A DNA stretch of 64,000 nucleotides from positions 310,001-374,000 of the IMG/VR virus record IMGVR_UViG_3300049215_000771, one strand, 5' to 3'. The translations under genes and the position numbers were made by a program. Shown one piece after another: positions 2,125-63,285 of the stretch (positions within the stretch are counted from its first letter, which is position 1; the number at the start of each line of letters is the position of its first letter). The notes beneath the pieces were generated by a model, which saw nothing but the letters and a program-made list of their open reading frames with translations, had not been told where the DNA came from and searched no databases.

Positions 2125-2696
2125 TTCGTTGCATAGAAGACTTGAAGCGTCCGCCTCGTGTTGGCACGAAGTACAAAGTGCCATGCGTGTTCGGTAAAAT
2201 CGCCAACATTGGCCCGCATTCCATTCCTCCTGATTGGTGGCCGGTACTTCGTCCGTCCCATCAGGACAGTAAATATGCCCCACGCCATCGCACTGTTTGG
2301 AAGAAAACGGATTGCGGCTACGACGGAGTTGACGAAGTTTACTACGAAGACGATCCAACGACACCCCACCACATGCACGTCGATCCGAGGTTCACCCCGG
2401 AATCAATGTACACACCCTGGGAAATCCACAACCGAAGCTGGCACTCGACCATTGTGGCCGAGTCAGACCTGGAGTGGCGGGTGTTGGTATGTGTCCGCAA
2501 AATGCCGATCCAAAGGCTATTCACTGGTTTTGGCCAACTTTTCATTGAAGATCACAAAGATAAATTCATCAAGTGTGGTCGCTGTCCGCACAAGGGGACT
2601 TTGCTGACATCGTGTCCAAGTGAGCGGGGTGTTGTAACCTGCCCCGCTCACGGACTACGATTCAACAAGAAAACTGGTGCCTGCCTAACAACTTAA
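2100..2696 (-). CDS. Protein with C-terminal Rieske [2Fe-2S]-like domain
   Basis: CPHKG-x13-CPAHGLRFNKKTGAC matches the Rieske CxH...CxxH boxes; N-terminal domain unknown (HHMHVD). Confidence 0.7.
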
Positions 2697-3649
2697 CGCC
2701 CTCCAGGTAGCGGAATGTAGTTTTGTGGAAACTGTTGTGGAGGCCCATTGCGGTTGATGATGGGAAGTTGCCGGGCAGCAGACCCCATGAAGGGCGGTTG
2801 GTTCAGAAGGAACTCATACCCCCGCTGCTGTCGCCAATACTCATGGATGACGTTGATTGGTGTGAAGTAACCAATTCCACTACCATCAATTCTGGATGTT
2901 CCCCAGCAGGTTCCGATGTAGTAGCCATCATCCGTCATCAATCCGCCCCCGGATCGTCCTGGGCGTGGGCTGTTGTACTTCGTAATCAAGTCCTTGCCTT
3001 CCGGCCCGACAATCTCCACGTCATAATGGGCCACTTCCCGCCCGCCATCACATCCACACGAATGCTGATGTGAACCAGGAGGAATCTGGTAACTCAAAGG
3101 GGCAATAGGGTAGTACGTCGGCACCCAATCTGGCTGGAAAGTAATCAAGCCCGTGTCACAGCCGCTCCTGTGACTGTAGAAAATGACCTTGGCCGGGTAC
3201 TCCTTCGTCGAGTCCAGCTTCTTCTCATTCTGATACCAGGTGATGACTTTGCACGTCATGTTTTTTCTTTCTCCTTCTTCGGCGGACATCGCCCCGTTAT
3301 TCCACAAGTGGCCGCAAGTGGCAACATAGGCAATGTTTCTGGAGGAGTCGTAGTAGCAAATCGTACCGGAACCAGAAGCTCCAGTCACGGAGATTTTCAC
3401 GGAGGCGCAAAGCCAGCGCCTGAACTCTTCCCCACGTTGTTCAACAGGTGGCGCTTGGTTGGAAACCAGTTCGCCGTAACCGCCGCCAATAATAGGCATA
3501 TTGTCCAGCGGATCAGTCCCGATGATGTGACGTTCGGAAAGTTGGATAAGTTGGTGGGTTTCTCGCTGTTGGGTGGGTGTTCCTACACTTAGAATCAAAC
3601 CTGTAGCAATAACAAACAGTGCGAGAAGGACTAAGGAAAATCTGCGCAT
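2693..3649 (-). CDS. Membrane-anchored/secreted trypsin-like serine protease (S1)
   Basis: Hydrophobic N-terminus; ATCGH (His), DTGLI (Asp), PGRSGGGL (Ser). Confidence 0.8.
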   Translation of the reverse strand: MRRFSLVLLALFVIATGLILSVGTPTQQRETHQLIQLSERHIIGTDPLDNMPIIGGGYGELVSNQAPPVEQRGEEFRRWLCASVKISVTGASGSGTICYYDSSRNIAYVATCGHLWNNGAMSAEEGERKNMTCKVITWYQNEKKLDSTKEYPAKVIFYSHRSGCDTGLITFQPDWVPTYYPIAPLSYQIPPGSHQHSCGCDGGREVAHYDVEIVGPEGKDLITKYNSPRPGRSGGGLMTDDGYYIGTCWGTSRIDGSGIGYFTPINVIHEYWRQQRGYEFLLNQPPFMGSAARQLPIINRNGPPQQFPQNYIPLPGGR

Positions 3650-3690
3650 TTCACTCCTTTGGGCATGGTCGTCCTGGGAGTATATATTGC

Positions 3691-3999
3691 TCAGAAGGGT
3701 ATCTTGCCCCTACAGATGTCGTAGAGCATCATCCAATCAGAAAGTTTCGCCATCCAGGGATTGCGAAACGCCGCTGGTTTGTTATGCTCAAATATGAAGT
3801 GTCCAGTCCAGGCGAATGGGTACACAATGAAGGGCATGAACACCAACAGTACCAGGAACCACCAGCTTGAAACAACACACAAAGTCAGAACGAGTCCGAG
3901 GTACAATAGAGTGGCAATTTGCCCCAGGACATGCAGACGACGACACCACTTGTTCTGGTGTAAACTCAAATAGTGTTGATAGTAGTCGTTGAATTTCAT
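3691..3999 (-). CDS. DUF962/Mpo1-like membrane protein
   Basis: YLSLHQNKWCRRLHVLG, hydrophobic helix, AWTGHFIFEHNKPA. Confidence 0.8.
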   Translation of the reverse strand: MKFNDYYQHYLSLHQNKWCRRLHVLGQIATLLYLGLVLTLCVVSSWWFLVLLVFMPFIVYPFAWTGHFIFEHNKPAAFRNPWMAKLSDWMMLYDICRGKIPF

Positions 4000-4019
4000 G
4001 ATGGTATATAGGAGGAAAT

Positions 4020-4502
4020 ATGCTCACTCTTGTCGTATCTCACGTCATCGGACTTACCAGGGAGCAACGGTATGATCTTCACGCCGGCAAACCCGTCGAT
4101 GTCGTTGGCGTCAGTGTGCCAGTTTGGTTCGAGAAAGGCAGCACTTCCGAGCCGGCCAACGAAGTGTTTGTCAACTACAAGCTAACGAACAAGAAAGAAT
4201 CATTCCCGATTAAGATGACCAAGTGTGGCTTCGAGATCAACATCCCCCAGGCCAACCCGGAAGCCGAGGCTGAGATCAAACAACTGCCCAAAGACGCCCT
4301 AGAAATTGTAGGGGTAAACACCAATTTTCCAAACTCTACAAACCTGCTCGATCTCAAGGACGGCGGGTCTGAGTTTCTGCAATTCCGTCAATATGCAAAA
4401 ACCAATTTGATTGCAGACGGGCAAGTAACTCGCAAACCTTTGAACATTGTTCATTGCGTCGAGATCAGGCCAATCGAAGATGTGATTCAGACGTTAAGTT
4501 AG
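4020..4502 (+). CDS. Hypothetical protein
   Basis: GGAGG RBS and TATATAG motif upstream. Confidence 0.65.
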   Translation: MLTLVVSHVIGLTREQRYDLHAGKPVDVVGVSVPVWFEKGSTSEPANEVFVNYKLTNKKESFPIKMTKCGFEINIPQANPEAEAEIKQLPKDALEIVGVNTNFPNSTNLLDLKDGGSEFLQFRQYAKTNLIADGQVTRKPLNIVHCVEIRPIEDVIQTLS

Positions 4503-8711: not shown

Positions 8712-8775
8712 ATACCCATCCTTTCTAATTAAGGCCATAATTGGCATGGGTATATAGCCACTTTGGGAGGAAAAC

Positions 8776-9921
8776 ATGCGGAAACTCACACTCCTGGCGT
8801 TGACCCTCGCAATCCTGATCGGCGTGGTGTATGTGGCGAAAAAGCAGCCCGGCCCGCAAAAACACCAACCAATTGTTCAAAACCCCTGGCCTAAGCAGAA
8901 AGAAGAAAAGCCCCCGCAACCACCCCAGCCCAAACCAGAAATTACCTTCGAGCAAGCCATCGGCGAGATTACTGAAGCTGACTTGCTCAAACACATGAAC
9001 TACCTTTGCTCTCAGGAGAATGAAGGTAGGATGTCGGGCAAGGCCGGCAACAAAACCTGCGCTGTCTATGTTGAACAACAATTCACCGCAGCCGGCCTGA
9101 ACGTGATGCGACAGAAGTTTCCGATCTCACGAGCCAACCCCGGCCCCAAGAATGAAAATGGCGATGACTTCTCCGAAAACATCATCGCTTGGATTGACGG
9201 AAACGATCCGGCCCTGAAAAATGAAATAATGGTCGTTGGGGCGCATATGGATCACATTGGCTACGGCCCACAATGGAGTTCAGCACGGGGGCAGGGCTTG
9301 AAGATTCACCCTGGGGCAGACGACAATGCCAGCGGCACCACAGCCCTCATCGAGATTGCTCGTGCCCACGCCAAGTGCAAATCACAGGTGAAGCGAACAA
9401 CCATCTTCATGGCTTTTTCCGGCGAGGAGATGGGATTGGTTGGCAGTCGTTACTACTGTAACAATCCCGTATTTCCGAAGAACGGGCCATCCATGTCCAA
9501 GCATATTTTTATGCTCAATATGGATATGATTGGATATTTGAACAAGGGCAGGCTGATGGCCGATTGGGGCGATGCCGAGAAAGTGACGCCAGACCTGAAA
9601 GGGATCATGAACGACCTGAGCGGCAAGTACACGTTCGCAAGATCAATTACCAGCAGTGGTTCTGGCGGAAGCGACCACGCTAGTTTTGCGGCCAAGAATG
9701 TGCCCGTTTGTATTTTGCATACCGGCCAGCACCCTCAATATCATACGCCGCAAGATACGGTGGACCGTATCAATATGCCTGGCATGACGCAAGTGACCAA
9801 ATACGCAACCGAGTTGGCATGGCGTATTGGGCACGCTCCCCGTTTCGCAAGTTACTACGGTGGGGAGTTGAAGAAGTCCGAGTTCGATCACGACTCGATT
9901 CAATTTGGAGGAACGAAATGA
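8776..9921 (+). CDS. M28 family aminopeptidase, N-terminal membrane anchor + Pro-rich linker
   Basis: GAHMDH, GADDNASG, SGEEMG, NMDMIG, SDHASF, YHTPQD. Confidence 0.92.
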   Translation: MRKLTLLALTLAILIGVVYVAKKQPGPQKHQPIVQNPWPKQKEEKPPQPPQPKPEITFEQAIGEITEADLLKHMNYLCSQENEGRMSGKAGNKTCAVYVEQQFTAAGLNVMRQKFPISRANPGPKNENGDDFSENIIAWIDGNDPALKNEIMVVGAHMDHIGYGPQWSSARGQGLKIHPGADDNASGTTALIEIARAHAKCKSQVKRTTIFMAFSGEEMGLVGSRYYCNNPVFPKNGPSMSKHIFMLNMDMIGYLNKGRLMADWGDAEKVTPDLKGIMNDLSGKYTFARSITSSGSGGSDHASFAAKNVPVCILHTGQHPQYHTPQDTVDRINMPGMTQVTKYATELAWRIGHAPRFASYYGGELKKSEFDHDSIQFGGTK

Positions 9922-14186: not shown

Positions 14187-15881
14187 ATGCCTATCCCAGC
14201 CAACAGATCGAAGATTGTTATCGGCAAAAACCTGCCGGTCCCTCGCCCACCCCGTCCAATCAATCAAGGTCCAGTACATTACTTCTATGACGATCCATCC
14301 ACCCCCGATCTCGTAGACGACGTGCCAATTGGTCCAACCCCACTGCCCGTCGCTATTCAGGGCTATATGGGCGGTGGACAACCAGTGGGATCGCTGTCGT
14401 GGCAAGCATCTACCAGCGCTGTTACCATCGGCAATGCCATGAGGTACATTACATCTCGTTGTAGCAGAAGGGCGATTGTCCGTTGGGCTGCAACCAACAC
14501 CTTGATGATTTTGGTCCGTGCTGGTGAGGATTTGAATGCTTACTACGACCGCCAGGCACTCAGGTTCTTCTACATCAAAGACCCTGTAACCAACCAGATT
14601 GTTTTTGCCTGCGATGCCGCCAGCGTAGTCGCCCACGAGTTGGGTCACGCTGTATTGGATATTCTACGCCCTGACTTCTGGAATACGCAGTCCCTTGAGA
14701 TTTTTGCTTTCCACGAAGCGTTCGGTGATTGCCACGCCCTGTTGGAGATTATGCAGCATGACAAGGTTCTCCAGTACGCATTGAACGAGACAGGCAACAA
14801 CCTGCTCCAAAGCAACGTCATCAGCCGACTCGCCAAGCAGATGGGAGCATGTGCCTATCATATCGCTCCTCCGTCCGCAGGATATAACCCCAACTACCTG
14901 AGAAACGCCGTCAACGACTTCAAGTACGTTCTGCCGGAAACTCTCCAGGAAGATACGCCAGATACAGTGTTGAGCAAGGAACCCCACAACTTCAGCCGTA
15001 TTTGGACTGGAGCATGGTGGGAGATCGTGGCAAAAATTCACCAGAAACTCATGGGCAGCATGGACCCACTGTCGGCTTTGCGCCAGGCTCGTGACACAGC
15101 CTGTGACTTGCTGGTAAATGCCGTGATCGACGTGCCCAATACACCACGCTTATACGACGCCTTGGCACGCCAGATGCTTGTGGTCGATGGACAGAATGGA
15201 GGCGCTTACAAAGACATACTCACCGAGGTATTCAACAACAGGAATATCCTCCTGAACAGGGTCACAGCGATGAGCGCAGTCGAGCAAGACACCATTGCCG
15301 CCATGCCAAACGCAAACGTCGTTCTGCACCCGATGGGCAAAAGCGTGTACCTCAGAAACAACAAAAAACTAAAAATGATGGATCACACCGTTTCTGCTCT
15401 TGCCAATGGGCGGCAGAATCCGTTGTATGGAGTTCATGTGGAAGTTCCGATGGAGAGTGCCTACCATTTCAATCATCAAGGTGTTATGGTAGACAGCCAT
15501 GAGGCTGATGAGGGGGAAGCCATCGAGTCAGCCCGGCACTGCCTGGACTTCCTGCACAATCACCGGATGGTCAGTCCTGATCCCAAAACGGCGTTCGAGA
15601 TCAAGGACAACAACCTGGTGCGCACTCACGCTTGCGGTGCTTGGTGTCCGAAGTGTAACAGAAACAATGCTTGCATTCCGGGTTCACCGGAATATCAGAA
15701 AGGATACAAGGCCAACAACAACGCCGGTTGCGGGTGCAAAGGGTGCGGTAACATCCCGGTGTGCGATTGTGATGGACCACCACCAGGACCAAGGCAAAAA
15801 CTAGGTTGCTTCACTACGGTTAAAACGGGTGGTGCAGCCAGATATAGCCACGGGCAGAACGCTTCAAGGAAAGTTTGCTAA
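14187..15881 (+). CDS. Gluzincin metallopeptidase (M36/M4-like) with Cys-rich C-terminus
   Basis: NAYYD, VAHELGH (HExxH), HEAFGD, EPHNFS; AAGGAG RBS. Confidence 0.85.
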   Translation: MPIPANRSKIVIGKNLPVPRPPRPINQGPVHYFYDDPSTPDLVDDVPIGPTPLPVAIQGYMGGGQPVGSLSWQASTSAVTIGNAMRYITSRCSRRAIVRWAATNTLMILVRAGEDLNAYYDRQALRFFYIKDPVTNQIVFACDAASVVAHELGHAVLDILRPDFWNTQSLEIFAFHEAFGDCHALLEIMQHDKVLQYALNETGNNLLQSNVISRLAKQMGACAYHIAPPSAGYNPNYLRNAVNDFKYVLPETLQEDTPDTVLSKEPHNFSRIWTGAWWEIVAKIHQKLMGSMDPLSALRQARDTACDLLVNAVIDVPNTPRLYDALARQMLVVDGQNGGAYKDILTEVFNNRNILLNRVTAMSAVEQDTIAAMPNANVVLHPMGKSVYLRNNKKLKMMDHTVSALANGRQNPLYGVHVEVPMESAYHFNHQGVMVDSHEADEGEAIESARHCLDFLHNHRMVSPDPKTAFEIKDNNLVRTHACGAWCPKCNRNNACIPGSPEYQKGYKANNNAGCGCKGCGNIPVCDCDGPPPGPRQKLGCFTTVKTGGAARYSHGQNASRKVC

Positions 15882-16327
15882 CGATTAAGCAATTTGAGGC
15901 GTTGTCCCTTGATTGGTCGCCCCCTATCAAACTCAACCGTGTCAACGTAATTGTCCGTGGTCCGGTAGACGAGTTCTGCAAAGTCCTTGTCGCCCATGAA
16001 ATTAACACGGATGTTTACTTTGGTGATATGGGGGCGAATTGTCAAAACATGAATCTTGAAACGATCCTTGTCCCCGGCAATAATGTAGAACCCGTCTTTT
16101 ACCGGCTCGTCCTTGGTGATGGGAAGGTTGAGTTCTTTTAAGGCAGACTTGACGGAGCGGTGCATTGTAGGCATTTCTTCGTCATAGTATTTATGAGCCT
16201 CACCTTCCTTCCACATGATGACGCCGGTTACAATAGGACTGGCGAGGTTAAAAGGGCTGATCGGCGAGCAGCCCTGTGCGGCCAAAACCGCAAATAAAAG
16301 AGCAAAAAAGAGCGTGAATTTTTTCAT
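15878..16327 (-). CDS. DUF3568-like lipoprotein
   Basis: Signal peptide with lipobox AQG-C; ...KVNIRVNFMGD; GGAGG RBS; start ATG 16327. Confidence 0.7.
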   Translation of the reverse strand: MKKFTLFFALLFAVLAAQGCSPISPFNLASPIVTGVIMWKEGEAHKYYDEEMPTMHRSVKSALKELNLPITKDEPVKDGFYIIAGDKDRFKIHVLTIRPHITKVNIRVNFMGDKDFAELVYRTTDNYVDTVEFDRGRPIKGQRLKLLNR

Positions 16328-16705: not shown

Positions 16706-17386
16706 GTGCATCTGGCTATCGAGTATCTTGCAAGGAAAAAGCTGTTCCGTGAGTGGTTCAACATCCCTTGCTCGCTGTTTGTGCAAGAAAGGGGAACGCA
16801 AAACAAGATCGCAGTAACAATCAACGAGGAGTTCAAACCTTCGGAGTTGTACTGCGTCAAGCACTGGCATATTTGCAAGTGTAAGCGCTCCCAGGCACTT
16901 CCGTCTTTCACCGAGTTTAGAGTCCCCAAATCTGAAGTGTTTACGCATCAGGCGGTGGTCCTATCAGGTCATCGCCTGATGCCTTACCACGCCTGCCCGA
17001 TCCCATTTCAAGAAAATGGCACACATCACCCGATGTCGGAAGAAATCTACACCTTCTTCTATGACAACTATTTAGACACTTTCAAGCACCGAGAGGCGAA
17101 GGTGAACTGGCTTTGGACCGAGTTCATCATGACCTATCTCCCTCAATTGTGCAGTCGTTCTCTCTATATACCGTTGTACAAATCTGATGCGGAAATCGCC
17201 TCAGACCAGCGTAGCATGGTGGCGACTGTGTACTCCGAAGTATGGCAGTGCTGGATCAAGTGGTGCAAATACATGCTCTACCTTGATGGCGTCCCCGGCG
17301 AACTGGTCTTCCTGGGCGAGTACCAACAAGGAGGTTTATGGACCGAAATAGCGCCTCAGTTGTCATTGTCTCGCTTCTTACACTGA
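16706..17386 (+). CDS. Hypothetical protein
   Basis: 226-aa ORF, GTG start abutting the previous stop. Confidence 0.6.
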   Translation: MHLAIEYLARKKLFREWFNIPCSLFVQERGTQNKIAVTINEEFKPSELYCVKHWHICKCKRSQALPSFTEFRVPKSEVFTHQAVVLSGHRLMPYHACPIPFQENGTHHPMSEEIYTFFYDNYLDTFKHREAKVNWLWTEFIMTYLPQLCSRSLYIPLYKSDAEIASDQRSMVATVYSEVWQCWIKWCKYMLYLDGVPGELVFLGEYQQGGLWTEIAPQLSLSRFLH

Positions 17387-49404: not shown

Positions 49405-50670
49405 ATGATGAACCCAAACGAAGTCCACGAGGTAATGCGTGAGTATACCATCGGGGATGGAGAGCATATTGTAATCGACAGGGACCGTAGCTTGGGTTCA
49501 TACATGGCTGATGCTCGCACGGGTCGTCGCTACTTAGACTGCGCTTCGCAATTCGCCAGTCAGCCCCTTGGTTGGAACCATCACAAACTCAACGATAAAT
49601 GGAACTACCTGGGCCGGGCCGCAGTTCACAAATACGCCAACTCGGACTTCTACAGCACCGACCTCGCCGAGTTCGTTTTGGAATTCGCCAACATTACTCC
49701 CGACTTCAAATACCACTTCTTCATCGAAGGCGGCACCCTTGGCGTAGAGAATGCCCTCAAAGCAGCCTTCGACTGGAAAGCGCAAAAGCTGGGATTGTCG
49801 GAAGAACAAGCCAACGACCTGGATGTGATTCACTTCAAGCAAGCCTTCCACGGACGCAGTGGCTACACGCTCTCCCTTACCAACACCACGCCCAACAAAA
49901 CAGCGCTATTTCCGAAGTTCAAATGGACCAGGGTACTCAACCCAAAGATTCACTTCCCGATGGTAATTGAAGATGTGTTGGCTGCCGAGAAGGAAAGCAT
50001 CTATCAGATACTCACAGGCATAACTCGCAACTGCAAGAAAACAGCAGCTATTGTTGTCGAAAGCATCCAGGCCGAGGGCGGCGACAACCACTTCCGCCCG
50101 GAGTTCTTCAGGGAACTGCGCAAGATCGCCGATGCCCATGATGTCATGCTCATCATGGACGAAGTACAAACAGGGCTGGGACTCACGGGACAATTCTGGT
50201 GCTACCAGCATTACGGCATGGTGCCCGATATGATTTGCTTCGGGAAGAAAACGCAGGTGTGCGGTTTTTGTTCTACGGAGCGAATCGACGAAGTTGAAAA
50301 CAACGTGTTCCACGTTTCCAGTCGAATCAACTCGACATGGGGCGGCAACATCGTTGACATGGTTCGGGCTAAATACATCATCGACATCATCCTTGAAGAT
50401 GGTCTGACTGCTAATGCAGCAAACGTAGGAAGATTGTTCCTCAATAAACTTCAGAATATCCCAAGGATTACCAATGTGCGAGGGCGGGGCTTGTTCCTCG
50501 CCTTCGACTTGGAATCAGATGCAAGTCGCAACGACGTGCTGCATCTGATGAGCGATAAAATGATAGCGATGAAATGTGGGGAGCGCTCCATACGACTACG
50601 GCCCCACCTGACGTTCTCGGATGAGGACGCTGATGAGGCCGTGAAAATCATTACCGAAGCTGTAGTTTAG
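49405..50670 (+). CDS. lat: L-lysine 6-transaminase (class III PLP aminotransferase)
   Basis: FHGRSGYTLSLTNT, QAEGGDNHFR, DEVQTG, FGKKTQVCG, SRINSTWGGN. Confidence 0.92.
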   Translation: MMNPNEVHEVMREYTIGDGEHIVIDRDRSLGSYMADARTGRRYLDCASQFASQPLGWNHHKLNDKWNYLGRAAVHKYANSDFYSTDLAEFVLEFANITPDFKYHFFIEGGTLGVENALKAAFDWKAQKLGLSEEQANDLDVIHFKQAFHGRSGYTLSLTNTTPNKTALFPKFKWTRVLNPKIHFPMVIEDVLAAEKESIYQILTGITRNCKKTAAIVVESIQAEGGDNHFRPEFFRELRKIADAHDVMLIMDEVQTGLGLTGQFWCYQHYGMVPDMICFGKKTQVCGFCSTERIDEVENNVFHVSSRINSTWGGNIVDMVRAKYIIDIILEDGLTANAANVGRLFLNKLQNIPRITNVRGRGLFLAFDLESDASRNDVLHLMSDKMIAMKCGERSIRLRPHLTFSDEDADEAVKIITEAVV

Positions 50671-52493
50671 GCCCAAGTCCTGGGTCGCTTGTCTTTCCTG
50701 TAGGGCTTCAAAATCGACTCAAAGAAATCTTTGTCGCCACGATAAATTGTGTGATCCCTGCTGGTGTTCATATCGTTGCGATGTTGCTGCGCAAGGATGG
50801 CGGCAATCTTTTCGTGCTTTTGTTGATCGTTCAGGTTTTGATCCCTGTGAATCTTGGTGATCTCTGCCTTGGCGTCATCACTGATGCTCTTGTCCTGGAT
50901 GCCGCCGTTATCTATCGCCCAACGTAGTTTTCCGACATCTTCGGGACTCCAATCATTTGTAGTATCTGGTGCCGGTTGCGTACCGCCATTGGTTGTCGCA
51001 CCCGTCGAACCTGGGGCGGCGGGCGGCAATTTCCAAATACCACGCTGCCGCCAATCATCGAGTTTCTTTTCCATGTCATCAACCGAATTGATGCTGGAAG
51101 CCCATTGAGCAAGTTTATTTTTGGGAGCGTTATCCCAAATAATTCGAGCCAATTCTTTGCTATATTGCTGCGGATTGCCCCCATGTTTTTGCGCTAACTG
51201 AACTACAAAATCATTCAGTTTTTTCCCTTCTGGAGTTTCAAGATTCTTCATCTTGGCTTCGTCCTCCTCCGTACTGAGTTGCTGCGCAATAGCATGTCCA
51301 GGAGTGGATTGTGATTGCGCCCCAGGAGTGGATTGTGATTGCGCTGATGTATCTGGCCCGCCGATTGCTTTCATGATGGACTGAACATGCTTCATGAAGT
51401 CGGGGCCAAAATGTTGCAATTGCTGCTGATTATGCAGCAAAGCGGTCAACGCTTGGATGGCCTGGTTCTTGGCGTCTGTTTGAATTCCTTGTGCGGCCCT
51501 ATTCCAACCAGCACCGAATCCGCCCTGGCCGAATATGTTGCTGACACCACCCCACAATTTCTTACCCCAATCCCATTCGCTGATAACATCCTGGAACTCA
51601 TCAGGAGTAAGATACCGACCCTGCTTGATGTACCAATTGGCAAATGCCGCTGGATCGTGGCCGGTTTCGGCGAGCCTGTTACAAAGACGACGAATCTTCT
51701 GCTCAATCAACACATGCTGCAAGAACGGATTTTCTTGTGGGTTGTAATGCGATTTCTGAACCTGTGGTGCTGCTTGTGGTGCTTGTGGTGGTGCTTGTGG
51801 TGCTTGTGGTACTTGTTGTGGTGCTTGTGGTGGTGCTTGTGGTGGTGCTTGTGGTGCCGCTTGTGGCGGATTCTGCAACATGCCAATTACTGCATGAAGT
51901 GATCCGACAAAGGCTTGATTGTTTTTCAAATCATCGGGCAATTTCCCCGAAAGATTCTGCAACGCTTGCATGGCGTTACTGATTACACCTTGAATGGCCT
52001 GGTTCTGTTGTGGAGCCTGTCCAGCGGCACCTTGTTGCCCACCAGCTTGCCCGCCTCCCGCTTGCCCAGCGGGTTGACCAGAAGCATCTTGTCCTCCACC
52101 AAGGCCGAGGCCCGCTTTAGCGCCGCCCAACAAATGCCCACCTGCTGTGCCCAATGCACCACGAATAGCCCCACCACCAAGAGCCATAGCAGCACCGGGA
52201 ACAGCAGCAAGATGGCCGGCACCCGTCCCAACAGCCTGTCCTAACTGAGCAAAATTATCGTAGTTGACGTTTTTCTTCCACCAGTCGAGGACACGATTTT
52301 CGACCAGTAGCAATTCTTGCTGAAGCCATTGTTTGGATTGTTCGGGTGCATCTTCCTTGTAGAGAATGCCTTCCGTGGCAAACCACTCGACGAATTTGCG
52401 AGGGTTTACGCCACGGGAGGCCATCAAGGTGAAGGCTGTTTCAGCTAGATTATTCAGCCGTCGAGAGCCGATGTGTTGGGCAAAAGACCGCAT
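50667..52493 (-). CDS. Large Gln/Gly/Ala/Pro-rich protein, putative internal virion protein
   Basis: MRSFAQH leader; duplicated domain; low-complexity repeats. Confidence 0.65.
   Translation of the reverse strand: MRSFAQHIGSRRLNNLAETAFTLMASRGVNPRKFVEWFATEGILYKEDAPEQSKQWLQQELLLVENRVLDWWKKNVNYDNFAQLGQAVGTGAGHLAAVPGAAMALGGGAIRGALGTAGGHLLGGAKAGLGLGGGQDASGQPAGQAGGGQAGGQQGAAGQAPQQNQAIQGVISNAMQALQNLSGKLPDDLKNNQAFVGSLHAVIGMLQNPPQAAPQAPPQAPPQAPQQVPQAPQAPPQAPQAAPQVQKSHYNPQENPFLQHVLIEQKIRRLCNRLAETGHDPAAFANWYIKQGRYLTPDEFQDVISEWDWGKKLWGGVSNIFGQGGFGAGWNRAAQGIQTDAKNQAIQALTALLHNQQQLQHFGPDFMKHVQSIMKAIGGPDTSAQSQSTPGAQSQSTPGHAIAQQLSTEEDEAKMKNLETPEGKKLNDFVVQLAQKHGGNPQQYSKELARIIWDNAPKNKLAQWASSINSVDDMEKKLDDWRQRGIWKLPPAAPGSTGATTNGGTQPAPDTTNDWSPEDVGKLRWAIDNGGIQDKSISDDAKAEITKIHRDQNLNDQQKHEKIAAILAQQHRNDMNTSRDHTIYRGDKDFFESILKPYRKDKRPRTWA
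51298..51344. repeat. 24-bp tandem repeat (AQSQSTPG x2)
   Basis: ccaggagtggattgtgattgcgc twice. Confidence 0.85.
51763..51866. repeat. Coding low-complexity repeat (PQA/PPQA)n
   Basis: (g)gtgcttgtg array. Confidence 0.85.
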
Positions 52494-53283
52494 TCTGTTC
52501 TCCTACTGGTTCGTAATACTTCAGGCGTAGCGTAGCGAACGCCATAACCGGCATTTTTTCCTTTCGGTTATATACGAACCCCAATGCGTTATTTAGCCCG
52601 TCGTCCCAGGTTTTGAACCAAGACATCGGAACGTAGTAAGAACGACTAAAAATCGGTGGAGCAAATGGCGCAGGCGGGACACGGTATCTAACAGCAACGC
52701 CGATGACCTCGTTGTGTTTGTTGAAAAGCGGCCCTCCTGAATCTCCAGGAAGAATACAACAAGAAGTACGAATGAGTCCCTTGTTCATTGCCGGCGTTCT
52801 GGTGTATACTCCTGTGATCTTTCCATCATCAAAACAAGGGTCATCGGCCATAGCAAAACCAACTCTTTTCACAGGTTCGCCAAACTTCAATTGGTAACTG
52901 AACAAAGCAAGTTTCGCTACCTCCAGCCTATCTTTGCTTTCAAACAAAACAACAGCTAAATCTTTTTCTTGGCTGTGGGCGTAAACCGTGGCCGGGTAGC
53001 GAGTGAAACCCATCAATTTGCCATTTTTGTCATAGCTCATGACGTACACAGAAAATTCACTACTTTCAGCGGTGATGTGTTGACAAGTGATAGCGACGTT
53101 ACGATATTTTTCTCCGACAAGTTCAGACCTAACAACGAAGGCAGTGCCGTGTCCTCCTTCATTATCTACCAGCTTAACAACTGGCTTGAGGGTTTGCCTC
53201 AGTAGTTTTTCGGGAGCATCGCCACTAAATACTGGTGAAGTTGAGAGCAATAGCAAGAAGCTGCAAGCAAGATATTTCAACAT
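52450..53283 (-). CDS. Secreted trypsin-like serine protease (S1)
   Basis: Signal peptide; GTAFVV, TCQH, DLAVV, PGDSGGPL. Confidence 0.85.
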   Translation of the reverse strand: MLKYLACSFLLLLSTSPVFSGDAPEKLLRQTLKPVVKLVDNEGGHGTAFVVRSELVGEKYRNVAITCQHITAESSEFSVYVMSYDKNGKLMGFTRYPATVYAHSQEKDLAVVLFESKDRLEVAKLALFSYQLKFGEPVKRVGFAMADDPCFDDGKITGVYTRTPAMNKGLIRTSCCILPGDSGGPLFNKHNEVIGVAVRYRVPPAPFAPPIFSRSYYVPMSWFKTWDDGLNNALGFVYNRKEKMPVMAFATLRLKYYEPVGEQNAVFCPTHRLSTAE

Positions 53284-53306
53284 TGGTTTTCCAAGTTAAG
53301 GAGGAC

Positions 53307-53582
53307 ATGATGGAAAGGAACCATCTTTACGTCCTGATTTTGATTTTGGGCACGGCCCTGGGCGTAACCTACGTCAGCAAGACGAAGGGCGGAATCGACA
53401 AGATTTTCACCCCGTCAGCGCCGGCAAGGGATAGTTGGATGCGTGACGATCCAGGTTGGGATAGGATGCCACAACCGGCTCCTACTCCACCGGCTCCAGT
53501 TCCGCCAACGAATCCCACACCGCCGCCGACACCACCGACGCCGCCCCCGCAACAGCCACAACCAAGGCAATCACCTGGCTGA
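53307..53582 (+). CDS. Small membrane-anchored Pro-rich protein
   Basis: AAGGAGG RBS; TM helix + Pro tract. Confidence 0.6.
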   Translation: MMERNHLYVLILILGTALGVTYVSKTKGGIDKIFTPSAPARDSWMRDDPGWDRMPQPAPTPPAPVPPTNPTPPPTPPTPPPQQPQPRQSPG

Positions 53583-53668
53583 AGGGTTTGATCCATATTC
53601 GCAGTTGCGAATTCGACACCAAATCCTATATGATACTATAGTGAAGATCAACCACGAGGGTCAATATC

Positions 53669-54934
53669 ATGGGGATGTTAGAAGAAGCAAAAAAGCAGCT
53701 TGATGCTGCGGCCCAATATGCAGAAATCGACCCTGAAAGTTGGGAAAGACTTCAATATCCGCAAAAAACCCTAAATGTCGTAATCCCAATGCGACATGAT
53801 GACGGAACGCTGAAGATGTATAAAGCGTACCGTTGCCAATACGACACAACGCTCGGCCCGGCGAAGGGAGGTATTCGTTACCATCCCAACGTCTGTCGGG
53901 ATCACTGCGAGGCGTTGGCGTTCTGGATGACATTCAAATGCGCTGCCTTGAAGCTCCCCTTCGGGGGAGCCAAAGGCGGCATTTGTGTTGACGCCACGAA
54001 ACTTTCACATCGAGAGTTGGAGCGTCTGAGCAAATCATACATCATTGCCTTCGCCGACTTCATCGGTCCCGACGAAGACATCCCTGCTCCTGATCTATAC
54101 ACAGATGAAAGGATCATGGGCTGGATGTACCAACAATATCGCCAGATCAAAGGCGGGCACCCGAAAGACATCGTAACCGGCAAACCAACGGCTTTGGGTG
54201 GAATCGAGGGGCGAAATTCGGCGACAGGTTACGGCGGGTACTACTGCCTGGAAACGATATTGAACTCAAATATGGGTCCGCCCAATATCCCTCCCAATCT
54301 CGACGATATTCGAGTTGCCATCCAGGGCTTCGGCAAAGTGGGATATTGGTTTGCCGAGAAATGTTTCCGACAAGGGTTGAAAGTCGTCGCCCTCAGCAAT
54401 GAGTTCGGCGGCTGCTACTGCGAACACGGCATCAATGTCGCCGCCGCTCGCAAATGCCTGGATGAGAGTGGAGGCAAGGAGTGGGGGCAGGGAGACAAGC
54501 TAACCAACGATGAACTCCTTCAAATGAACGTGGATTTGTTGGTTCCTGCCGCCATTGAGAATGTGTTGACCAAAGATAATGCTGGCAAGGTGCAAGCAAA
54601 GATGATTTTGGAATTGGCGAACGGCCCTACTACAAATGAGGCCGACGCCATTTTGAATGACAAAGGGGTATTTGTCATTCCCGACATCCTGGCGAACGCC
54701 GGGGGAGTCGTTGTTTCTTACTTCGAGTGGCTTCAGAACAGGACGGCTCGCAACTGGACTTTGGAGCAGGTAGATGATGACTTGAAGAAGATGATGGACT
54801 ATGCCACAGAAAAAACTCTGGCCTACAAAGTGAAGCACAAAATCTCGGCCAGAACAGCGGCATATGTACTGGCCTTGAGGCGAATCAATGCGGCCAACGC
54901 CTGTCTTGGGAACAAAGGTTATTTTCAGCGTTGA
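53669..54934 (+). CDS. gdhA: Glu/Leu/Phe/Val dehydrogenase (glutamate dehydrogenase)
   Basis: GPAKGGIRYHP, GGAKGG, DIPAPD, QGFGKVG, ANGPTT, PDILANAGGVVVSYFEW. Confidence 0.95.
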   Translation: MGMLEEAKKQLDAAAQYAEIDPESWERLQYPQKTLNVVIPMRHDDGTLKMYKAYRCQYDTTLGPAKGGIRYHPNVCRDHCEALAFWMTFKCAALKLPFGGAKGGICVDATKLSHRELERLSKSYIIAFADFIGPDEDIPAPDLYTDERIMGWMYQQYRQIKGGHPKDIVTGKPTALGGIEGRNSATGYGGYYCLETILNSNMGPPNIPPNLDDIRVAIQGFGKVGYWFAEKCFRQGLKVVALSNEFGGCYCEHGINVAAARKCLDESGGKEWGQGDKLTNDELLQMNVDLLVPAAIENVLTKDNAGKVQAKMILELANGPTTNEADAILNDKGVFVIPDILANAGGVVVSYFEWLQNRTARNWTLEQVDDDLKKMMDYATEKTLAYKVKHKISARTAAYVLALRRINAANACLGNKGYFQR

Positions 54935-61391: not shown

Positions 61392-61635
61392 TTGTTGCCG
61401 CCGTGACTCCACCACGATGCGGTCAAGTCGGACAATCTCCGTTCCGCTGATGGAGCAGGCATTCACCCCTTCTGGCTCTCAGCACCTACAAACGAAGAAG
61501 CGTTCTTGAAGCACGGCGACAACAATCAAAGCGTTTCAAGAACGCATGGCAAGTTGTTGGGTTTTCATGTGAACTCCTGATTTCAGCCCACCCACCCTAT
61601 ATACGAGTGTCCGATTCAACACAAGGAGGAGAATC

Positions 61636-61887
61636 ATGACGAACTTTTGGAACTGGTTGATGGGCGTTCTTGGACTGGCACCAACAGTGCTGGCCGATGT
61701 CAAGCCAATCGTTGACGACGGCGAGGCTATTGTTGTCGCTCTGGAGAAAGTCATCAGCGACATTAAGACAAGGAACTTCACGTCTGTCGTCGCCGACACG
61801 CAGGCTCTCGCAACCGATGTTCAGACTTTCGCAACCGAAGTTCAGGCTGTAATCACTCAGATTCAGTCTAGCAACACCACCAAGTAA
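61636..61887 (+). CDS. Small amphipathic-helical protein
   Basis: AGGAGG RBS. Confidence 0.6.
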   Translation: MTNFWNWLMGVLGLAPTVLADVKPIVDDGEAIVVALEKVISDIKTRNFTSVVADTQALATDVQTFATEVQAVITQIQSSNTTK

Positions 61888-61898
61888 ATAGCTGCCTT

Positions 61899-62351
61899 AT
61901 GGCTGCAACGAAACGTAAATTAACAGCGTTAGACATTAACGCCATACTGAAGAAACTGGACGATTACCTTGTTTCGCTACAGAAACAGTGGGACGCCCAA
62001 CCACATTCTCCATCTAGTTGGTGGAGACTGAACAGGGTGCGCTTCTCGCAAGGCGTCCAGTTCCTCATCGAATGCTTGGACAAGTTGGTTTTGTTCGTAG
62101 AGGACTTGATCCCGGCTGGTACGGATAAAAAAGCCGCCGTTATCTCGCTCCTGGACAAGTTGTTCGATTACGTTGTTACACCATGTTTACCGATCTGGCT
62201 GAAACCATTCGCCCCGATCATCAAAGACATCGTGATTAACTTCGTGATCTCCAGCATTATCGACTTGATTGTGTCCAAGTACAACAAAGGCATTTGGAAA
62301 AAGGATGTGACATATGCCAAGACGAAGACCTACTACCTCCCACGCAGATAA
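61899..62351 (+). CDS. Hypothetical helical protein (weak holin-like features)
   Basis: GTDKKAAVISLL, hydrophobic C-terminal helix; TAAATAG upstream. Confidence 0.55.
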   Translation: MAATKRKLTALDINAILKKLDDYLVSLQKQWDAQPHSPSSWWRLNRVRFSQGVQFLIECLDKLVLFVEDLIPAGTDKKAAVISLLDKLFDYVVTPCLPIWLKPFAPIIKDIVINFVISSIIDLIVSKYNKGIWKKDVTYAKTKTYYLPRR

Positions 62352-63285
62352 GTTTCATTGCAAACTCCTGCCGTATGTACGGGAAGACCTACTTACGATG
62401 CAGGATGTGCAAAAACAAGTTGGCTGGGAAATTACAGCTTTCAACTTGCCATTGGCCTGGAACTACTCGCAAGGCGAGGGCGTCAAAGTCGCCGTCATCG
62501 ACAGTGGTGCCGACCTAGACCACCATGACCTTGTAGAAAACCTGCTGCCCGGCAAAAACTTTGTCGATCCAACCAAGACCCCGGAGGACGACTGCGGCCA
62601 CGGTACGCACGTCACAGGCATCATCTGCGCTAAAAACACCGAGATGGGTATGGTGGGTGTTGCCCCGAAATGCAAAGTCATTCCGGTGAAGGCTTTGAAC
62701 AACAAGGGAGTCGGGGATTTGCGAAACGTCGCTGAGGCTATTCGCTGGTCAGCAGATCAGGGTGTAGACTTCATCACGATGTCGCTTGGCTCCCCCGCAC
62801 CACTTCAACAAGTACGCAAGGCTTTGCAGTATGCGGTATCGAAAGGTGTTGTGATTTTCTGTGCAGCCGGCAACGCTGGCACGACACGGGAGATTTTCTA
62901 CCCTGCGGCTTACCCGGAAGCAATTGGCGTAGGAGCAATTGACGAAAAATTCGAGCGTGCAAACTTCAGTTGCACAGGCAATGACCTGGACTTCCTGGCC
63001 CCTGGCGTCCGCATCCTGAGTACGGTCCCCGACAACTGGTACGCCGTGATGTCTGGTACAAGCCAGGCGAACCCGTTCCTGGTGGGCGTGGCAGCCCTGC
63101 TACTGTCCTACAAGCGGGCACGCAACCTGGACTTGAAGCTGGACACGAATGATGATTACTGCAATGCTTTGAAACAGTACACGATCCCGTTGGCCGATCC
63201 GCAATTTGCCGGCAACAGATTCTTCCAGGGCTTTGGAATCATTGATCCACGGAAGATGGAGGAGTGGGCGGCGGCGCACCAGTAA
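62314..63285 (+). CDS. S8 subtilase, intracellular serine protease (ISP) type
   Basis: VAVIDSG, GHGTHVTG, AAGN, SGTSQA.P; N-terminal LLPY; no signal peptide or prodomain. Confidence 0.92.
   Translation: MPRRRPTTSHADKFHCKLLPYVREDLLTMQDVQKQVGWEITAFNLPLAWNYSQGEGVKVAVIDSGADLDHHDLVENLLPGKNFVDPTKTPEDDCGHGTHVTGIICAKNTEMGMVGVAPKCKVIPVKALNNKGVGDLRNVAEAIRWSADQGVDFITMSLGSPAPLQQVRKALQYAVSKGVVIFCAAGNAGTTREIFYPAAYPEAIGVGAIDEKFERANFSCTGNDLDFLAPGVRILSTVPDNWYAVMSGTSQANPFLVGVAALLLSYKRARNLDLKLDTNDDYCNALKQYTIPLADPQFAGNRFFQGFGIIDPRKMEEWAAAHQ

What the first reader, a model, noticed from the sequence alone, without database searches (positions are those of the whole stretch)
2693..63285. Arsenal of eight non-morphogenetic peptidases from six families
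Seen with catalytic motifs: S1 (2693, 52450), M28 (8776), M36/M4-like (14187), papain/C39-like (17338, 42827), M14 (19236) and S8 (62314), besides the gp21 protease. Five have a signal peptide or membrane anchor, often with a Pro-rich stalk, and cover endo-, amino- and carboxypeptidase activity. Inference: this density is unusual for a phage. It suggests an extracytoplasmic proteolysis programme, such as nutrient release, receptor removal (superinfection exclusion) or breakdown of a protein-rich envelope at lysis.
Basis: partly seen in the sequence, partly recalled or inferred. Interest (0 to 1): 0.8.

Follow-up and report, generated by a model that had tools for sequence, protein, structure and literature searches.

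The report
Conserved exported peptidase set in megaphages
A roughly 670-kb uncultivated phage carries eight intact protein-cutting enzymes beside its capsid protease; five of them sit in a gene backbone shared by many related giant phages, and five of the eight are built for export into the host cell envelope, where their role is still unknown.

Summary
All eight ORFs are peptidases with intact catalytic residues. Six pass Pfam or come close: M28, M14, S8, C39 and S1b pass, and S1a falls just below threshold. The two without any Pfam hit fold as thermolysin/fungalysin (14187) and as a C39 papain-like peptidase (17338). Five have an N-terminal signal or anchor, and three of those also have a Pro-rich spacer.

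The set is very unusual against 50,697 GenBank phage records, where seven of the eight families match 0-6 records each. It is not private to this phage, though. S1a, M28, the M4-like enzyme, the C39-like enzyme and M14 belong to a conserved backbone (primase-S1a...TerL-M28...M4L-C39L-M14-portal) found in dozens of related metagenomic contigs. These genes carry the same conserved upstream TATATA element as TerL and the head operon.

Three enzymes have no export signal and are probably cytoplasmic: the M4-like enzyme, the standalone C39, and an S8 of the intracellular-subtilisin type with a LIPY-type propeptide.

S1a and C39L are unrelated enzymes that share a 25-residue C-terminal tail, which points to common docking or control.

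My best reading is a clade-wide periplasmic proteolysis programme co-regulated with the head genes. Its purpose is unproven; amino-acid salvage and envelope loosening are both open. Host and expression timing are unknown.

The parts
2693..3649 (-). S1a: anchored PA-clan (trypsin-fold) serine endopeptidase, 318 aa, with the shared C-terminal tail
   Evidence: Trypsin_2 25 bits, below the 27.6 cut-off. H114 and S233 invariant, D165 >=90% in 36 homologs. N-in/C-out charge bias in 20 of 23 homologs. 69 distinct syntenic IMG/VR loci.
8776..9921 (+). M28 aminopeptidase with N-terminal anchor and Pro-rich spacer, divergent from TerL
   Evidence: PF04389 2.9e-41. Closest solved structures are bacterial leucyl aminopeptidases. 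Metal and catalytic residues kept in >=97% of 31 homologs. 46 IMG/VR loci, one of them the window's own genome, the rest 44-54% identical.
14187..15881 (+). M4/M36-like gluzincin metalloendopeptidase (M4L), no export signal, Cys-rich C-terminus
   Evidence: No Pfam hit. Fold match to fungalysin and thermolysin. HExxH + E177 + D181 + H267 invariant in 41 sequences. At least 487 homologs. Only 1 of 120 homologs has a hydrophobic N-terminus.
17338..18108 (+). C39-like papain-fold cysteine peptidase (C39L) with N-terminal anchor, Pro-rich spacer and the shared C-terminal tail
   Evidence: No Pfam hit. Fold match to C39 peptidase domains. Q90, C91, H171, D179 invariant in 37 sequences. 99 of 119 homologs have a hydrophobic N-terminus. 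84 of 89 have N-in/C-out charge bias.
19236..20309 (+). M14 zinc carboxypeptidase with N-terminal anchor and Pro-rich spacer, just upstream of portal
   Evidence: PF00246 2.5e-31. Closest solved structures are carboxypeptidases A, T and D; MpaA is insignificant. Zinc, substrate-binding and catalytic residues invariant in 36 sequences. Anchor in 108 of 118 and Pro-rich spacer in 86 of 118 homologs.
42827..43429 (+). Standalone C39 cysteine peptidase, no export signal
   Evidence: PF03412 9e-12 and PF13529 4.6e-11. Solved-structure hits to ComA and PCAT peptidase domains. Homologs in LR756511 (45% identity) and LR756501/LR756503 (31%). Q31, C37, H128, D144 invariant in 3 sequences.
52450..53283 (-). 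S1b: secreted trypsin-fold serine endopeptidase with a short signal peptide
   Evidence: Trypsin_2 1e-20. Its LR756511 homolog (31.5% identity) keeps the signal peptide and H/D/S.
62314..63285 (+). S8 subtilase of the intracellular-subtilisin (ISP) type
   Evidence: PF00082 7.6e-48. Near full-length matches to intracellular subtilisins 2x8j and 7y6m. N-terminal LLPY fits the ISP propeptide motif [LVI][IFLV]P[YFH] (PMC6220982) and the motif is kept in 4 relatives. No hydrophobic N-terminus.
27220..27906 (+). gp21-type prohead maturation protease; with TerL 6831-8789(-), portal 20903-23470(+) and MCP 28843-30279(+) it is the morphogenetic context
   Evidence: phrog_207 8.6e-49; TerL, portal and MCP PHROG hits.
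2696..2773 (-). Shared C-terminal tail on S1a (motif ...LPIINRNGPPQQFPQNYIPLPGGR)
   Evidence: Tail consensus and profile-profile match to the C39L tail: prob 98.3%, E 1.9e-14.
18034..18105 (+). Shared C-terminal tail on C39L (motif LIPIVDRMGNGVFDPKQYILIPGR)
   Evidence: These are the only two tail-bearing ORFs in the window.
8751..8756 (.). TATATA promoter-like element in the TerL/M28 divergent region. Others lie at 3681 (S1a), 14153 (p183/M4L), 17165 (C39L), 19199 (M14) and 25178 (head operon p663-gp21-scaffold-MCP)
   Evidence: GTATATA occurs 14 times against 1.2 expected. Orthologs keep TATATA within 80 nt upstream in 42-89% of cases against a 3.3% background.
49405..54934 (.). Amino-acid metabolism genes flanking S1b: aminotransferase 49405-50670(+) and glutamate dehydrogenase 53669-54934(+)
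   Evidence: phrog_2736 aminotransferase. ELFV_dehydrog 5e-64.

Best explanation
The window is the packaging and head region of a T4-like huge phage of about 670 kb. Shown: eight intact peptidases besides the prohead protease. Five of them (S1a, M28, M4-like, C39-like, M14) are conserved backbone genes of a broad uncultivated clade, in the order primase-S1a...TerL-M28...M4L-C39L-M14-portal. S1a, M28, C39-like and M14 have an N-terminal anchor and S1b a signal peptide; across homologs of the four with family data, the flanking charges favour a cytoplasmic N-terminus and an exported catalytic domain. Three have a Pro-rich spacer about 40 residues long. S1a and C39-like share a 25-residue C-terminal tail. 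Inferred: the exported enzymes are made together with the head genes, because they share the TATATA element. They sit tethered to the inner membrane with their catalytic domains in the periplasm. There the endopeptidases (S1a, S1b, C39-like) open periplasmic or envelope proteins and imported peptides, and M28 and M14 trim the fragments from both ends to free amino acids. The most likely pay-off is amino-acid salvage for a very large burst, possibly fed into the phage's own glutamate dehydrogenase and aminotransferase, with loosening of the envelope before lysis as a side effect or second purpose. The shared tail would dock or control the two endopeptidases jointly. The M4-like enzyme, the standalone C39 and the ISP-type S8 (self-inhibited by its LIPY-type propeptide) act in the cytoplasm and belong to other, unknown tasks. 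I put about 0.7 on the exported, co-regulated, clade-wide proteolysis part and about 0.35 on the salvage purpose.
For: Family, fold and catalytic residues. Anchors and spacers conserved in the families. Positive-inside bias toward N-in/C-out: C39L 84/89, M28 35/41, S1a 20/23, M14 66/104. Clade-wide homologs on contigs up to 693 kb. Synteny. TATATA within 80 nt upstream of orthologs: TerL 20/32, M28 18/31, p183 25/28, M4L 20/25, C39L 22/38, M14 14/33, p663 10/20, against 3.3% background. M28 resembles secreted nutritional leucyl aminopeptidases (LapA best in NCBIfam; solved structures), and M14 resembles digestive-type carboxypeptidases A and T. Glutamate dehydrogenase and aminotransferase flank S1b. 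Shared tail. A GT9 heptosyltransferase domain in the window suggests a host with LPS, hence a periplasm.
Against: There are no expression or localisation data. Topology rests on hydrophobicity and charge heuristics, since SignalP and DeepTMHMM were not available. The charge bias for M14 is weaker (23 ties, 15 opposite). The constant placement inside head or tail modules fits a virion or lysis role as well as co-regulation. The TATATA element also precedes non-structural genes such as thymidylate kinase and is not found at M14 or the tail genes in the distant loci L008 and L009. Auxiliary metabolic genes are usually variable rather than backbone genes. Exopeptidases are poor at attacking folded proteins. 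The host is unknown: the glutamate dehydrogenase gives no host signal.
Confidence: 0.45

Rival explanations
1. Late lysis accessory. The tethered peptidases reach across the periplasm on their Pro-rich spacers and cut the protein links between outer membrane and cell wall (Lpp-, OmpA- or Pal-type tethers). This would free the outer membrane at lysis, the job done by spanins or, in mycobacteriophages, by LysB.
For: Backbone position next to packaging and head genes, and the shared TATATA element. Anchor plus spacer of about 40 residues conserved in M14 and M28. Conservation across the whole clade suggests a core function. C-terminal basic residues are a typical carboxypeptidase target (own knowledge).
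Against: No M28 or M14 enzyme is known in phage lysis. No holin, endolysin or spanin was recognised beside them in the ORFs scanned against Pfam, about 58. M14 resembles carboxypeptidases A and T rather than the cell-wall peptidase MpaA. Exopeptidases make an odd lysis tool.
Confidence: 0.2
2. Virion-associated or morphogenetic proteins. Some of the enzymes, especially the M4-like enzyme without a signal, M14 and C39-like, would be packaged or tail-borne and act during entry or assembly. The hydrophobic N-terminus would then serve membrane insertion on ejection, or membrane-bound prohead assembly as in T4.
For: C39L has a head or packaging gene within 6 kb in 33 of 40 distinct loci. M14 lies between tail tube and baseplate genes in L008, L009 and L071-L074. 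M4L is always next to conserved unknown genes of the head module.
Against: The charge bias typical of Sec/YidC-inserted N-in/C-out proteins is conserved. S1b has an ordinary cleavable-type signal. No PHROG structural annotation for any of them. The M4-like enzyme has one BFVD fold match (A0A386K830, unnamed, E 9e-6) and thus no match to an annotated virion protein.
Confidence: 0.12
3. A proteolytic cascade that matures exported phage proteins. The shared C-terminal tail on S1a and C39L is a removable inhibitory or docking peptide. M14 and M28 trim precursors, and the real substrates are phage-encoded exported proteins rather than host proteins.
For: An identical tail sits on two unrelated endopeptidase families and on a third exported protein family beside M14. 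Tails often end in basic residues. C39 enzymes are classically leader-peptide processing enzymes.
Against: No precursor peptides or double-glycine leaders were identified. The tail's function is entirely untested. The AlphaFold model gives low confidence for the tail.
Confidence: 0.1
4. Superinfection exclusion or receptor removal. The periplasmic proteases would destroy receptors or the ejection proteins of incoming phages.
For: Al-Shayeb et al. 2020 (PMC7162821) note that huge phages encode membrane and surface proteins that may alter susceptibility to other phages. The enzymes are located in the periplasm.
Against: Exclusion genes are usually early and variable, whereas these are backbone genes sharing an element with head genes. 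Amino- and carboxypeptidases add little to exclusion.
Confidence: 0.08

Closest known systems
Secreted bacterial leucyl aminopeptidases of family M28 (Vibrio/Aeromonas proteolytica aminopeptidase, Streptomyces griseus aminopeptidase, Legionella LapA)
   Same: Pfam M28 at 142 bits. All co-catalytic zinc ligands and the catalytic Glu are present. Extracytoplasmic location.
   Different: Encoded in a phage head-module backbone. Tethered by an N-terminal anchor and a Pro-rich spacer rather than secreted with a propeptide. LapA equivalog score is far below its cut-off (72 against 600).
M14A/B carboxypeptidases (carboxypeptidase A2, T, D)
   Same: HxxE...H zinc site, N-R substrate-carboxylate site and catalytic Glu are all invariant. 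These are the best solved-structure matches.
   Different: No pro-domain, and membrane-tethered. Homologs are almost absent from sequenced phages (1 of 50,697 records). It is not the cell-wall-peptide subtype: MpaA scores E 0.05.
C39 peptidase domains of PCAT/ComA bacteriocin ABC transporters
   Same: Papain-like fold with a Gln/Cys/His/Asp set, for both the 42827 ORF (Pfam hit) and the 17338 ORF (fold only).
   Different: Both are standalone proteins, not N-terminal transporter domains. 17338 is exported with an anchor and has Gln adjacent to the Cys. No double-glycine substrates were found.
Thermolysin (M4) and fungalysin (M36) metalloproteases
   Same: Two-lobed fold. HExxH on the active-site helix, a NEAxxD-like HEAFGD motif supplying the third ligand, and a conserved His.
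   Different: No signal peptide or propeptide. Extra C-terminal domains and a Cys-rich tail. 10-15% identity, TM about 0.5-0.58, and no Pfam match. It is a family of its own, confined so far to huge-phage contigs.
Intracellular subtilisin proteases (ISPs) of Bacillus and relatives, and the S8 proteases of large Bacillus phages (phrog_3677)
   Same: S8 catalytic domain, no signal, short N-terminal extension with the LIPY/F-type motif. 121 phage records hold relatives. phrog_3677 at 2.5e-76.
   Different: Found in a huge phage with a probably Gram-negative-type host. The partner ORF 61899-62351 is co-conserved upstream. Function in phages is unknown.
Envelope-directed proteins of huge phages (Al-Shayeb 2020, PMC7162821; Yuan and Chen 2026 preprint, 10.64898/2026.10.24.761521)
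   Same: Huge phages encode proteins targeted to the host membrane or surface. Peptidases are listed among the broadly distributed auxiliary classes.
   Different: Those papers describe sortase B, PspA and outer-membrane proteins. Neither describes a syntenic exported peptidase set in the head module or the shared C-terminal tail.

Membership tests
Peptidase M28 | Pfam PF04389 above the gathering score | tested here: met
   141.8 bits against 21.3
Peptidase M28 | Two-zinc site (His, bridging Asp, Glu, Asp, His) plus catalytic Glu | tested here: met
   H157, D182, E218, D250, H323 and E217 kept in >=97% of 31 homologs; aligned to 2ek8
Peptidase M14 (carboxypeptidase A-like) | Pfam PF00246 above the gathering score; HxxE...H zinc ligands, Asn-Arg carboxylate site, catalytic Glu | tested here: met
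   109.8 bits against 21.6; H130, E133, H225, N189-R190 and E293 invariant in 36 sequences
Peptidase M14, cell-wall peptide subtype (MpaA / gamma-D-Glu-mDAP peptidases) | Sequence membership in the MpaA equivalog, or closest similarity to that subtype | tested here: not met
   NF007897 at E 0.05, 12.6 bits against a cut-off of 157. All 45 solved-structure hits are A-, B-, T-, D-, M- or N-type carboxypeptidases.
Peptidase S8, intracellular subtilisin subgroup | PF00082 above the gathering score, Asp-His-Ser triad, no signal peptide, N-terminal [LVI][IFLV]P[YFH] propeptide motif | tested here: met
   163.7 bits. D-H-S triad read from the sequence (VIDSG / HGTH / SGTS). Strict invariants in 5 sequences include H96 and S247/S250, and LLPY, LLPH or LLPF is present in all 5. 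ISP structures cover residues 14-303. Motif definition from PMC6220982.
Trypsin-like serine peptidase (Pfam Trypsin_2, PA clan): S1b | Gathering score plus His-Asp-Ser triad | tested here: met
   75.3 bits against 27.6; H69, D108, S182 kept in the LR756511 homolog
Trypsin-like serine peptidase (Pfam Trypsin_2, PA clan): S1a | Gathering score | tested here: not met
   25.0 bits against 27.6. However, H114 and S233 (in GRSGGG) are invariant and D165 is >=90% in 36 homologs. It works like a PA-clan serine peptidase without being a formal Pfam member.
Peptidase C39: ORF 42827-43429 | Pfam PF03412 above the gathering score; Gln, Cys, His, Asp | tested here: met
   45.4 bits against 22; Q31, C37, H128, D144 invariant in 3 sequences
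Peptidase C39: ORF 42827-43429 | N-terminal domain of a bacteriocin ABC exporter that cleaves double-glycine leaders | tested here: not met
   A standalone 200-aa protein. The NCBIfam transporter models score far below their cut-offs.
Peptidase C39: ORF 17338-18108 (C39L) | Sequence-profile membership | tested here: not met
   No Pfam, NCBIfam or PHROG hit. Similarity is at fold level only: 3zua and 6mpz, TM 0.68. Q90, C91, H171, D179 invariant.
Peptidase M4 / M36: ORF 14187-15881 | Sequence-profile membership | tested here: not met
   No Pfam hit for the window protein. A few homologs carry precomputed PF02128 or PF01447 hits.
Peptidase M4 / M36: ORF 14187-15881 | Gluzincin active site (HExxH plus a downstream Glu on the next helix) in a thermolysin-like fold | tested here: met
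   Invariant H150, E151, H154, E177, D181. The residues lie in helices 145-160 and 170-188. The top 15 PDB fold matches are all M36 or M4 enzymes.
Exported (Sec-type signal or signal-anchor) proteins | N-terminal hydrophobic segment with positive-inside orientation | tested here: inconclusive
   Heuristics agree, but no dedicated predictor or experiment was available.

The most novel reading that the evidence does not exclude
A large clade of megaphages carries, as part of its core late gene set, a self-contained periplasmic protein-digestion pathway. It consists of tethered serine and cysteine endopeptidases that share a dedicated C-terminal docking or control tail, plus an aminopeptidase and a carboxypeptidase. 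The pathway either converts the host envelope proteome into amino acids for the burst, or replaces spanins by cutting the outer-membrane tethers. Either would be a new kind of phage-host interface.
Probability: 0.25. Interest if true: 0.8.

Novelty: new variant of a known kind. Interest (0 to 1): 0.6.

Why it matters
Phage-encoded peptidases are normally either capsid maturation proteases or cell-wall hydrolases. This set is different. It is a syntenic group of exported amino-, carboxy- and endopeptidases fixed in the packaging and head backbone of many of the largest known phages, and it is nearly absent from the 50,697 sequenced phage records.

If the enzymes act in the periplasm, they define an unexplored step of huge-phage infection: resource salvage, envelope dismantling, or outer-membrane release.

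The analysis also turned up three items to add to the catalogue. Two are peptidase families without Pfam models, the M4/M36-like and the exported C39-like. The third is a C-terminal tail motif shared by unrelated enzymes. All of these can be tested directly by expression in E. coli.

Tried and rejected
- **T4 late promoter.** The consensus TATAAATA gave 1 match against 0.33 expected, so it is not used here.
- **Nearest GenBank relative.** The megablast search with window 20000-44000 against GenBank phages found nothing. The closest record, LR756511.1 (major capsid protein 81.5% identical), shares only M4-like, S1b and C39 with the window.
- **Single-sequence IMG/VR scans.** For M14, C39 and S1b these found only the window's own genome, because the word method is too strict. 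Alignment-based scans were needed.
- **Host inference from glutamate dehydrogenase.** The best bacterial matches are 46-51% identical and spread over cyanobacteria, Deltaproteobacteria, Latescibacterota and others, so there is no host signal. A Bacteroidetes host is only a literature prediction for other Mahaphage genomes.
- **PADLOC.** Only a generic subtilase model hit, so there is no sign that these genes are defence-system parts.
- **BFVD fold search for the M4-like enzyme.** One unnamed match, nothing informative.
- **Third tail-bearing ORF.** L073:6860-7804 looks by eye like a clan-CD His/Cys peptidase, but neither Pfam nor the PDB supports that.
- **Metagenome scan for the tail octapeptide.** Most hits were chance or out of frame; only 5 were true tails.
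- **TATATA element in distant relatives.** It is not seen at M14 or the tail genes in L008 and L009.

Full report
**What the window is.** PHROG profiles identify a large terminase (6831-8789, minus strand), a portal (20903-23470), a gp21-type prohead protease (27220-27906) and a T4-type major capsid protein (28843-30279). The exact protein of ORF 17338 is recorded on a 673,178-bp ENA scaffold. A 532,729-bp copy of the genome is in IMG/VR. The megablast search with window 20000-44000 found no match in GenBank phages. The nearest record is the 595-kb uncultured phage LR756511.1, with a capsid protein 81.5% identical. That record belongs to the LR7565xx series of uncultured huge phages, which I attribute from memory to the Al-Shayeb et al. 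2020 set. Most other shared proteins are only 30-60% identical.

**Checking the observation.** Pfam supports M28 (2.9e-41), M14 (2.5e-31), S8 (7.6e-48), C39 (9e-12) and S1b (Trypsin_2, 1e-20). S1a reaches 25 bits, just under the 27.6-bit cut-off. ORFs 14187 and 17338 hit nothing in Pfam, NCBIfam or PHROGs.

For those two I collected homologs (at least 487 and 214), aligned them and predicted structures (pLDDT 84.5 and 82.8).
- ORF 14187 matches only fungalysins (M36) and thermolysin-type M4 enzymes (top 15 PDB hits, prob 1.0). Its invariant residues are H150-E151-x-x-H154, E177, D181 and H267, on the expected helices.
- ORF 17338 matches C39 double-glycine peptidase domains (TM 0.68). Q90, C91, H171 and D179 are invariant, and the Cys sits at the start of a helix.

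The other active sites are also intact and conserved:
- S1a: H114, D165, S233.
- S1b: H, D and S kept in its LR756511 homolog.
- M28: both zinc sites and the catalytic Glu.
- M14: HxxE...H, N-R and the catalytic Glu.
- C39: Q31, C37, H128, D144.
- S8: D-H-S triad read from the sequence, with H96 and the Ser block invariant in 5 sequences.

S1a, M28, C39-like and M14 have an N-terminal hydrophobic segment, and S1b has a short signal peptide. M28, C39-like and M14 follow the anchor with a spacer that is 22-35% proline.

**How unusual it is.** tblastn of each enzyme against 50,697 GenBank phage records gives these counts: S1a 0, C39-like 0, M14 1, M4-like 2, S1b 3, M28 6, C39 6, S8 121. The S8 hits are mostly large Bacillus phages. 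Most of the few M14 and M28 hits are short gut-metagenome fragments. Nine peptidase genes among about 70 genes is far above what sequenced phages show.

**It is a clade trait, not a private arsenal.** The metagenomic protein collection holds hundreds of relatives of the M4-like, C39-like and M14 proteins at about 35-85% identity, on contigs up to 693 kb. IMG/VR holds 45 other M28 loci (44-54% identity), 36 other M14 loci, 53 other C39-like loci and at least 128 S1a relatives.

Local tblastn of all window ORFs against these loci shows a fixed order: primase, S1a, p160, Gp80-like ... TerL, M28 ... p371, p201, p183, M4L, C39L, (M14), portal, p86 ... p663, gp21, scaffold-like, MCP.
- Of 40 distinct C39-like loci, 33 hold a head or packaging gene within 6 kb, 24 hold M4L and 14 hold M14.
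- In more distant relatives, C39L sits beside the p663-gp21-MCP operon. M14 sits between tail-tube and baseplate genes.
- S8 has four IMG/VR relatives at 67-72% identity, one of them on the same 223-kb contig as M28, M14, C39L and S1a.
- C39 and S1b have homologs in LR756511, and C39 also in the 735-kb LR756501.

**Export is a conserved property.** A hydrophobic N-terminus is present in 108 of 118 M14 homologs and 99 of 119 C39-like homologs, but in only 1 of 120 M4-like homologs. The Pro-rich spacer is present in 86 of 118 M14 homologs. The flanking charges favour a cytoplasmic N-terminus and an exported domain in 84 of 89 C39L, 35 of 41 M28, 20 of 23 S1a and 66 of 104 M14 homologs.

The S8 is different. 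It aligns over nearly its full length with intracellular subtilisins. It carries LLPY at residues 18-21, which fits the ISP propeptide motif [LVI][IFLV]P[YFH] (PMC6220982), and the motif is kept in its relatives. So five enzymes are extracytoplasmic, and three (M4-like, C39, S8) are most likely cytoplasmic.

**Regulation.** The heptamer GTATATA occurs 14 times in the window against 1.2 expected, mostly 11-40 nt upstream of start codons. Sites include S1a, TerL/M28, p183/M4L, C39L, M14 and the head operon starting at p663.

In related loci, TATATA lies within 80 nt upstream of TerL in 20/32, M28 18/31, p183 25/28, M4L 20/25, C39L 22/38, M14 14/33 and p663 10/20 cases, against a 3.3% background. 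It is rare before portal (1/22) and MCP (1/8) and absent before gp21 (0/7), which follow other genes in apparent operons. This looks like a -10-only promoter of the T4-late type, though it is not TATAAATA. It ties the peptidase genes to the head genes.

The inference is moderate. The element also precedes thymidylate kinase, and it is missing at M14 in the distant loci L008 and L009.

**A shared tail.** S1a and C39L are unrelated folds, yet they end in the same module of about 25 residues. The consensus is lPIIDRNgpQGxYxKdYILqP for C39L and IPIiDRngpq..yp.dYIPxP for S1a. Profile-profile comparison of the two tail alignments gives prob 98.3% and E 1.9e-14.

In the window only these two ORFs carry the tail. 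In the IMG/VR loci, 43 of 44 tail-bearing ORFs are S1a or C39L homologs. The exception is a signal-peptide protein next to M14 (L073:6860-7804). A homolog of that protein is also among the 5 true tail hits in a metagenome-wide scan, the other 4 being S1a or C39L homologs. Pfam gives it no peptidase assignment. The tail suggests common docking, sorting or control of the exported endopeptidases.

**What it most likely does.** The evidence shows a conserved set of inner-membrane-tethered, periplasm-facing endo- and exopeptidases that appears to be co-regulated with the head genes. The enzyme types are digestive rather than cell-wall-directed:
- M28 is closest to secreted leucyl aminopeptidases.
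- M14 is closest to carboxypeptidases A, T and D, not to MpaA.
- C39L is closest to C39 peptidases and papain-like toxins, not to NlpC/P60-type enzymes.

Together the set can reduce proteins or peptides to amino acids. The window also encodes a glutamate dehydrogenase and an aminotransferase flanking S1b. I therefore favour amino-acid salvage from periplasmic and envelope proteins or imported peptides, with envelope weakening as a possible second effect.

Four rivals remain open: a spanin-like or LysB-like outer-membrane release function, a virion or assembly role suggested by the persistent placement in structural modules, a maturation cascade for exported phage proteins, and superinfection exclusion. 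None can be excluded without localisation, timing and activity data.

**Host.** The host is unknown. A GT9 heptosyltransferase domain in the window suggests an LPS-bearing host. Al-Shayeb et al. predicted Bacteroidetes hosts for the largest Mahaphage genomes. The glutamate dehydrogenase gives no host signal.

**Literature.** Al-Shayeb et al. 2020 mention membrane- and surface-directed huge-phage proteins but have no hit for 'protease' or 'peptidase'. A 2026 preprint on envelope-associated proteins of 7,187 huge phages lists peptidases only as a broadly distributed class and focuses on sortase B, PspA and outer-membrane proteins. No paper in the library combines jumbo phage, carboxypeptidase and aminopeptidase. 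Within the reach of these searches, the syntenic exported peptidase set and the shared tail appear undescribed.

**Verdict.** This is a new variant of a known kind, namely phage enzymes aimed at the host envelope. It is of moderate to high interest mainly because it is conserved, syntenic and testable.

Noticed in passing
window 2696-2773 (-) and 18034-18105 (+); L073:6860-7804 (-): Two unrelated exported endopeptidases (S1a, C39L) share a conserved C-terminal tail of about 25 residues (PIIDRNGPQG...YIPxP type). A third exported protein family beside M14 in relatives carries it too. M14, M28 and the M4-like enzyme lack it.
   Followed up: partly
window 3681, 4005, 8751, 14153, 17165, 19199, 25178, 37037, 46323, 52569 and others: A (G)TATATA element is 12-fold enriched and lies 11-40 nt upstream of many starts. 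It is conserved upstream of orthologous TerL/M28, p183/M4L, C39L, M14 and the head operon in related contigs. It is a candidate -10-only promoter.
   Followed up: partly
window 49405-50670 (+) and 53669-54934 (+): An aminotransferase and a full-length glutamate dehydrogenase flank the secreted S1b protease and an unknown 608-aa ORF (50667-52493, -) that overlaps the S1b 3' end. The nearest bacterial glutamate dehydrogenases are only 46-51% identical.
   Followed up: partly
window 18256-18999 (+): A SIR2-family protein (6.5e-43) is inserted between C39L and M14. It is present only in the closest relatives (5 loci), so it is a recent insertion into the conserved block.
   Followed up: partly
window 5000-5569 (-): A 2H phosphoesterase with Pfam hits to 2_5_RNA_ligase2 and to the anti-CBASS protein Acb1 (2e-8). 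It is a possible cyclic-nucleotide-degrading counter-defence gene, conserved next to TerL in 25 related loci.
   Followed up: no
window 59370-61391 (+): A 673-aa fusion of a GT2 glycosyltransferase and a GT9 (heptosyltransferase-type) domain. This hints at modification of LPS core and at a host with an outer membrane.
   Followed up: no
window 61899-62351 (+): A 150-aa ORF without family hits overlaps the start of the S8 gene and is co-conserved with it in related contigs. It may be a partner or regulator of the protease.
   Followed up: no
window 34878-35423 (+) and 43362-44063 (-): Two paralogous ORFs, the second with a weak T4 gp19 tail-tube hit, match repeated tube-like genes that lie just upstream of M14 in distant relatives (L008, L009, L071-L074). 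The C39 gene overlaps the 3' end of the second one.
   Followed up: partly
window 15878-16948 (-): A multi-pass membrane protein with a C-terminal DUF3568 (lipoprotein-type) domain sits between M4L and C39L. It is found only in the closest relatives, and its long 5' end overlaps ORF 16706-17386, which the source annotation calls on the other strand.
   Followed up: no
window 54931-55545 (+), 53235-53582 (+), 44119-44568 (+): Further small exported or anchored proteins: one has a lipobox-like LCGC, and two have single-pass anchors. Peptidases make up about half of the exported proteins recognisable in the window.
   Followed up: no
window 45734-46306 (-), 31382-32044 (+): A LAGLIDADG homing endonuclease and a T5orf172/GIY-YIG-like domain protein lie within the structural region.
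   Followed up: no
window 39779-40792 (-) / 39899-40774 (+): The longest ORF here is on the minus strand, but the plus-strand ORF carries a clear inosine-uridine nucleoside hydrolase domain (1.8e-14). The plus-strand ORF is the real gene.
   Followed up: no
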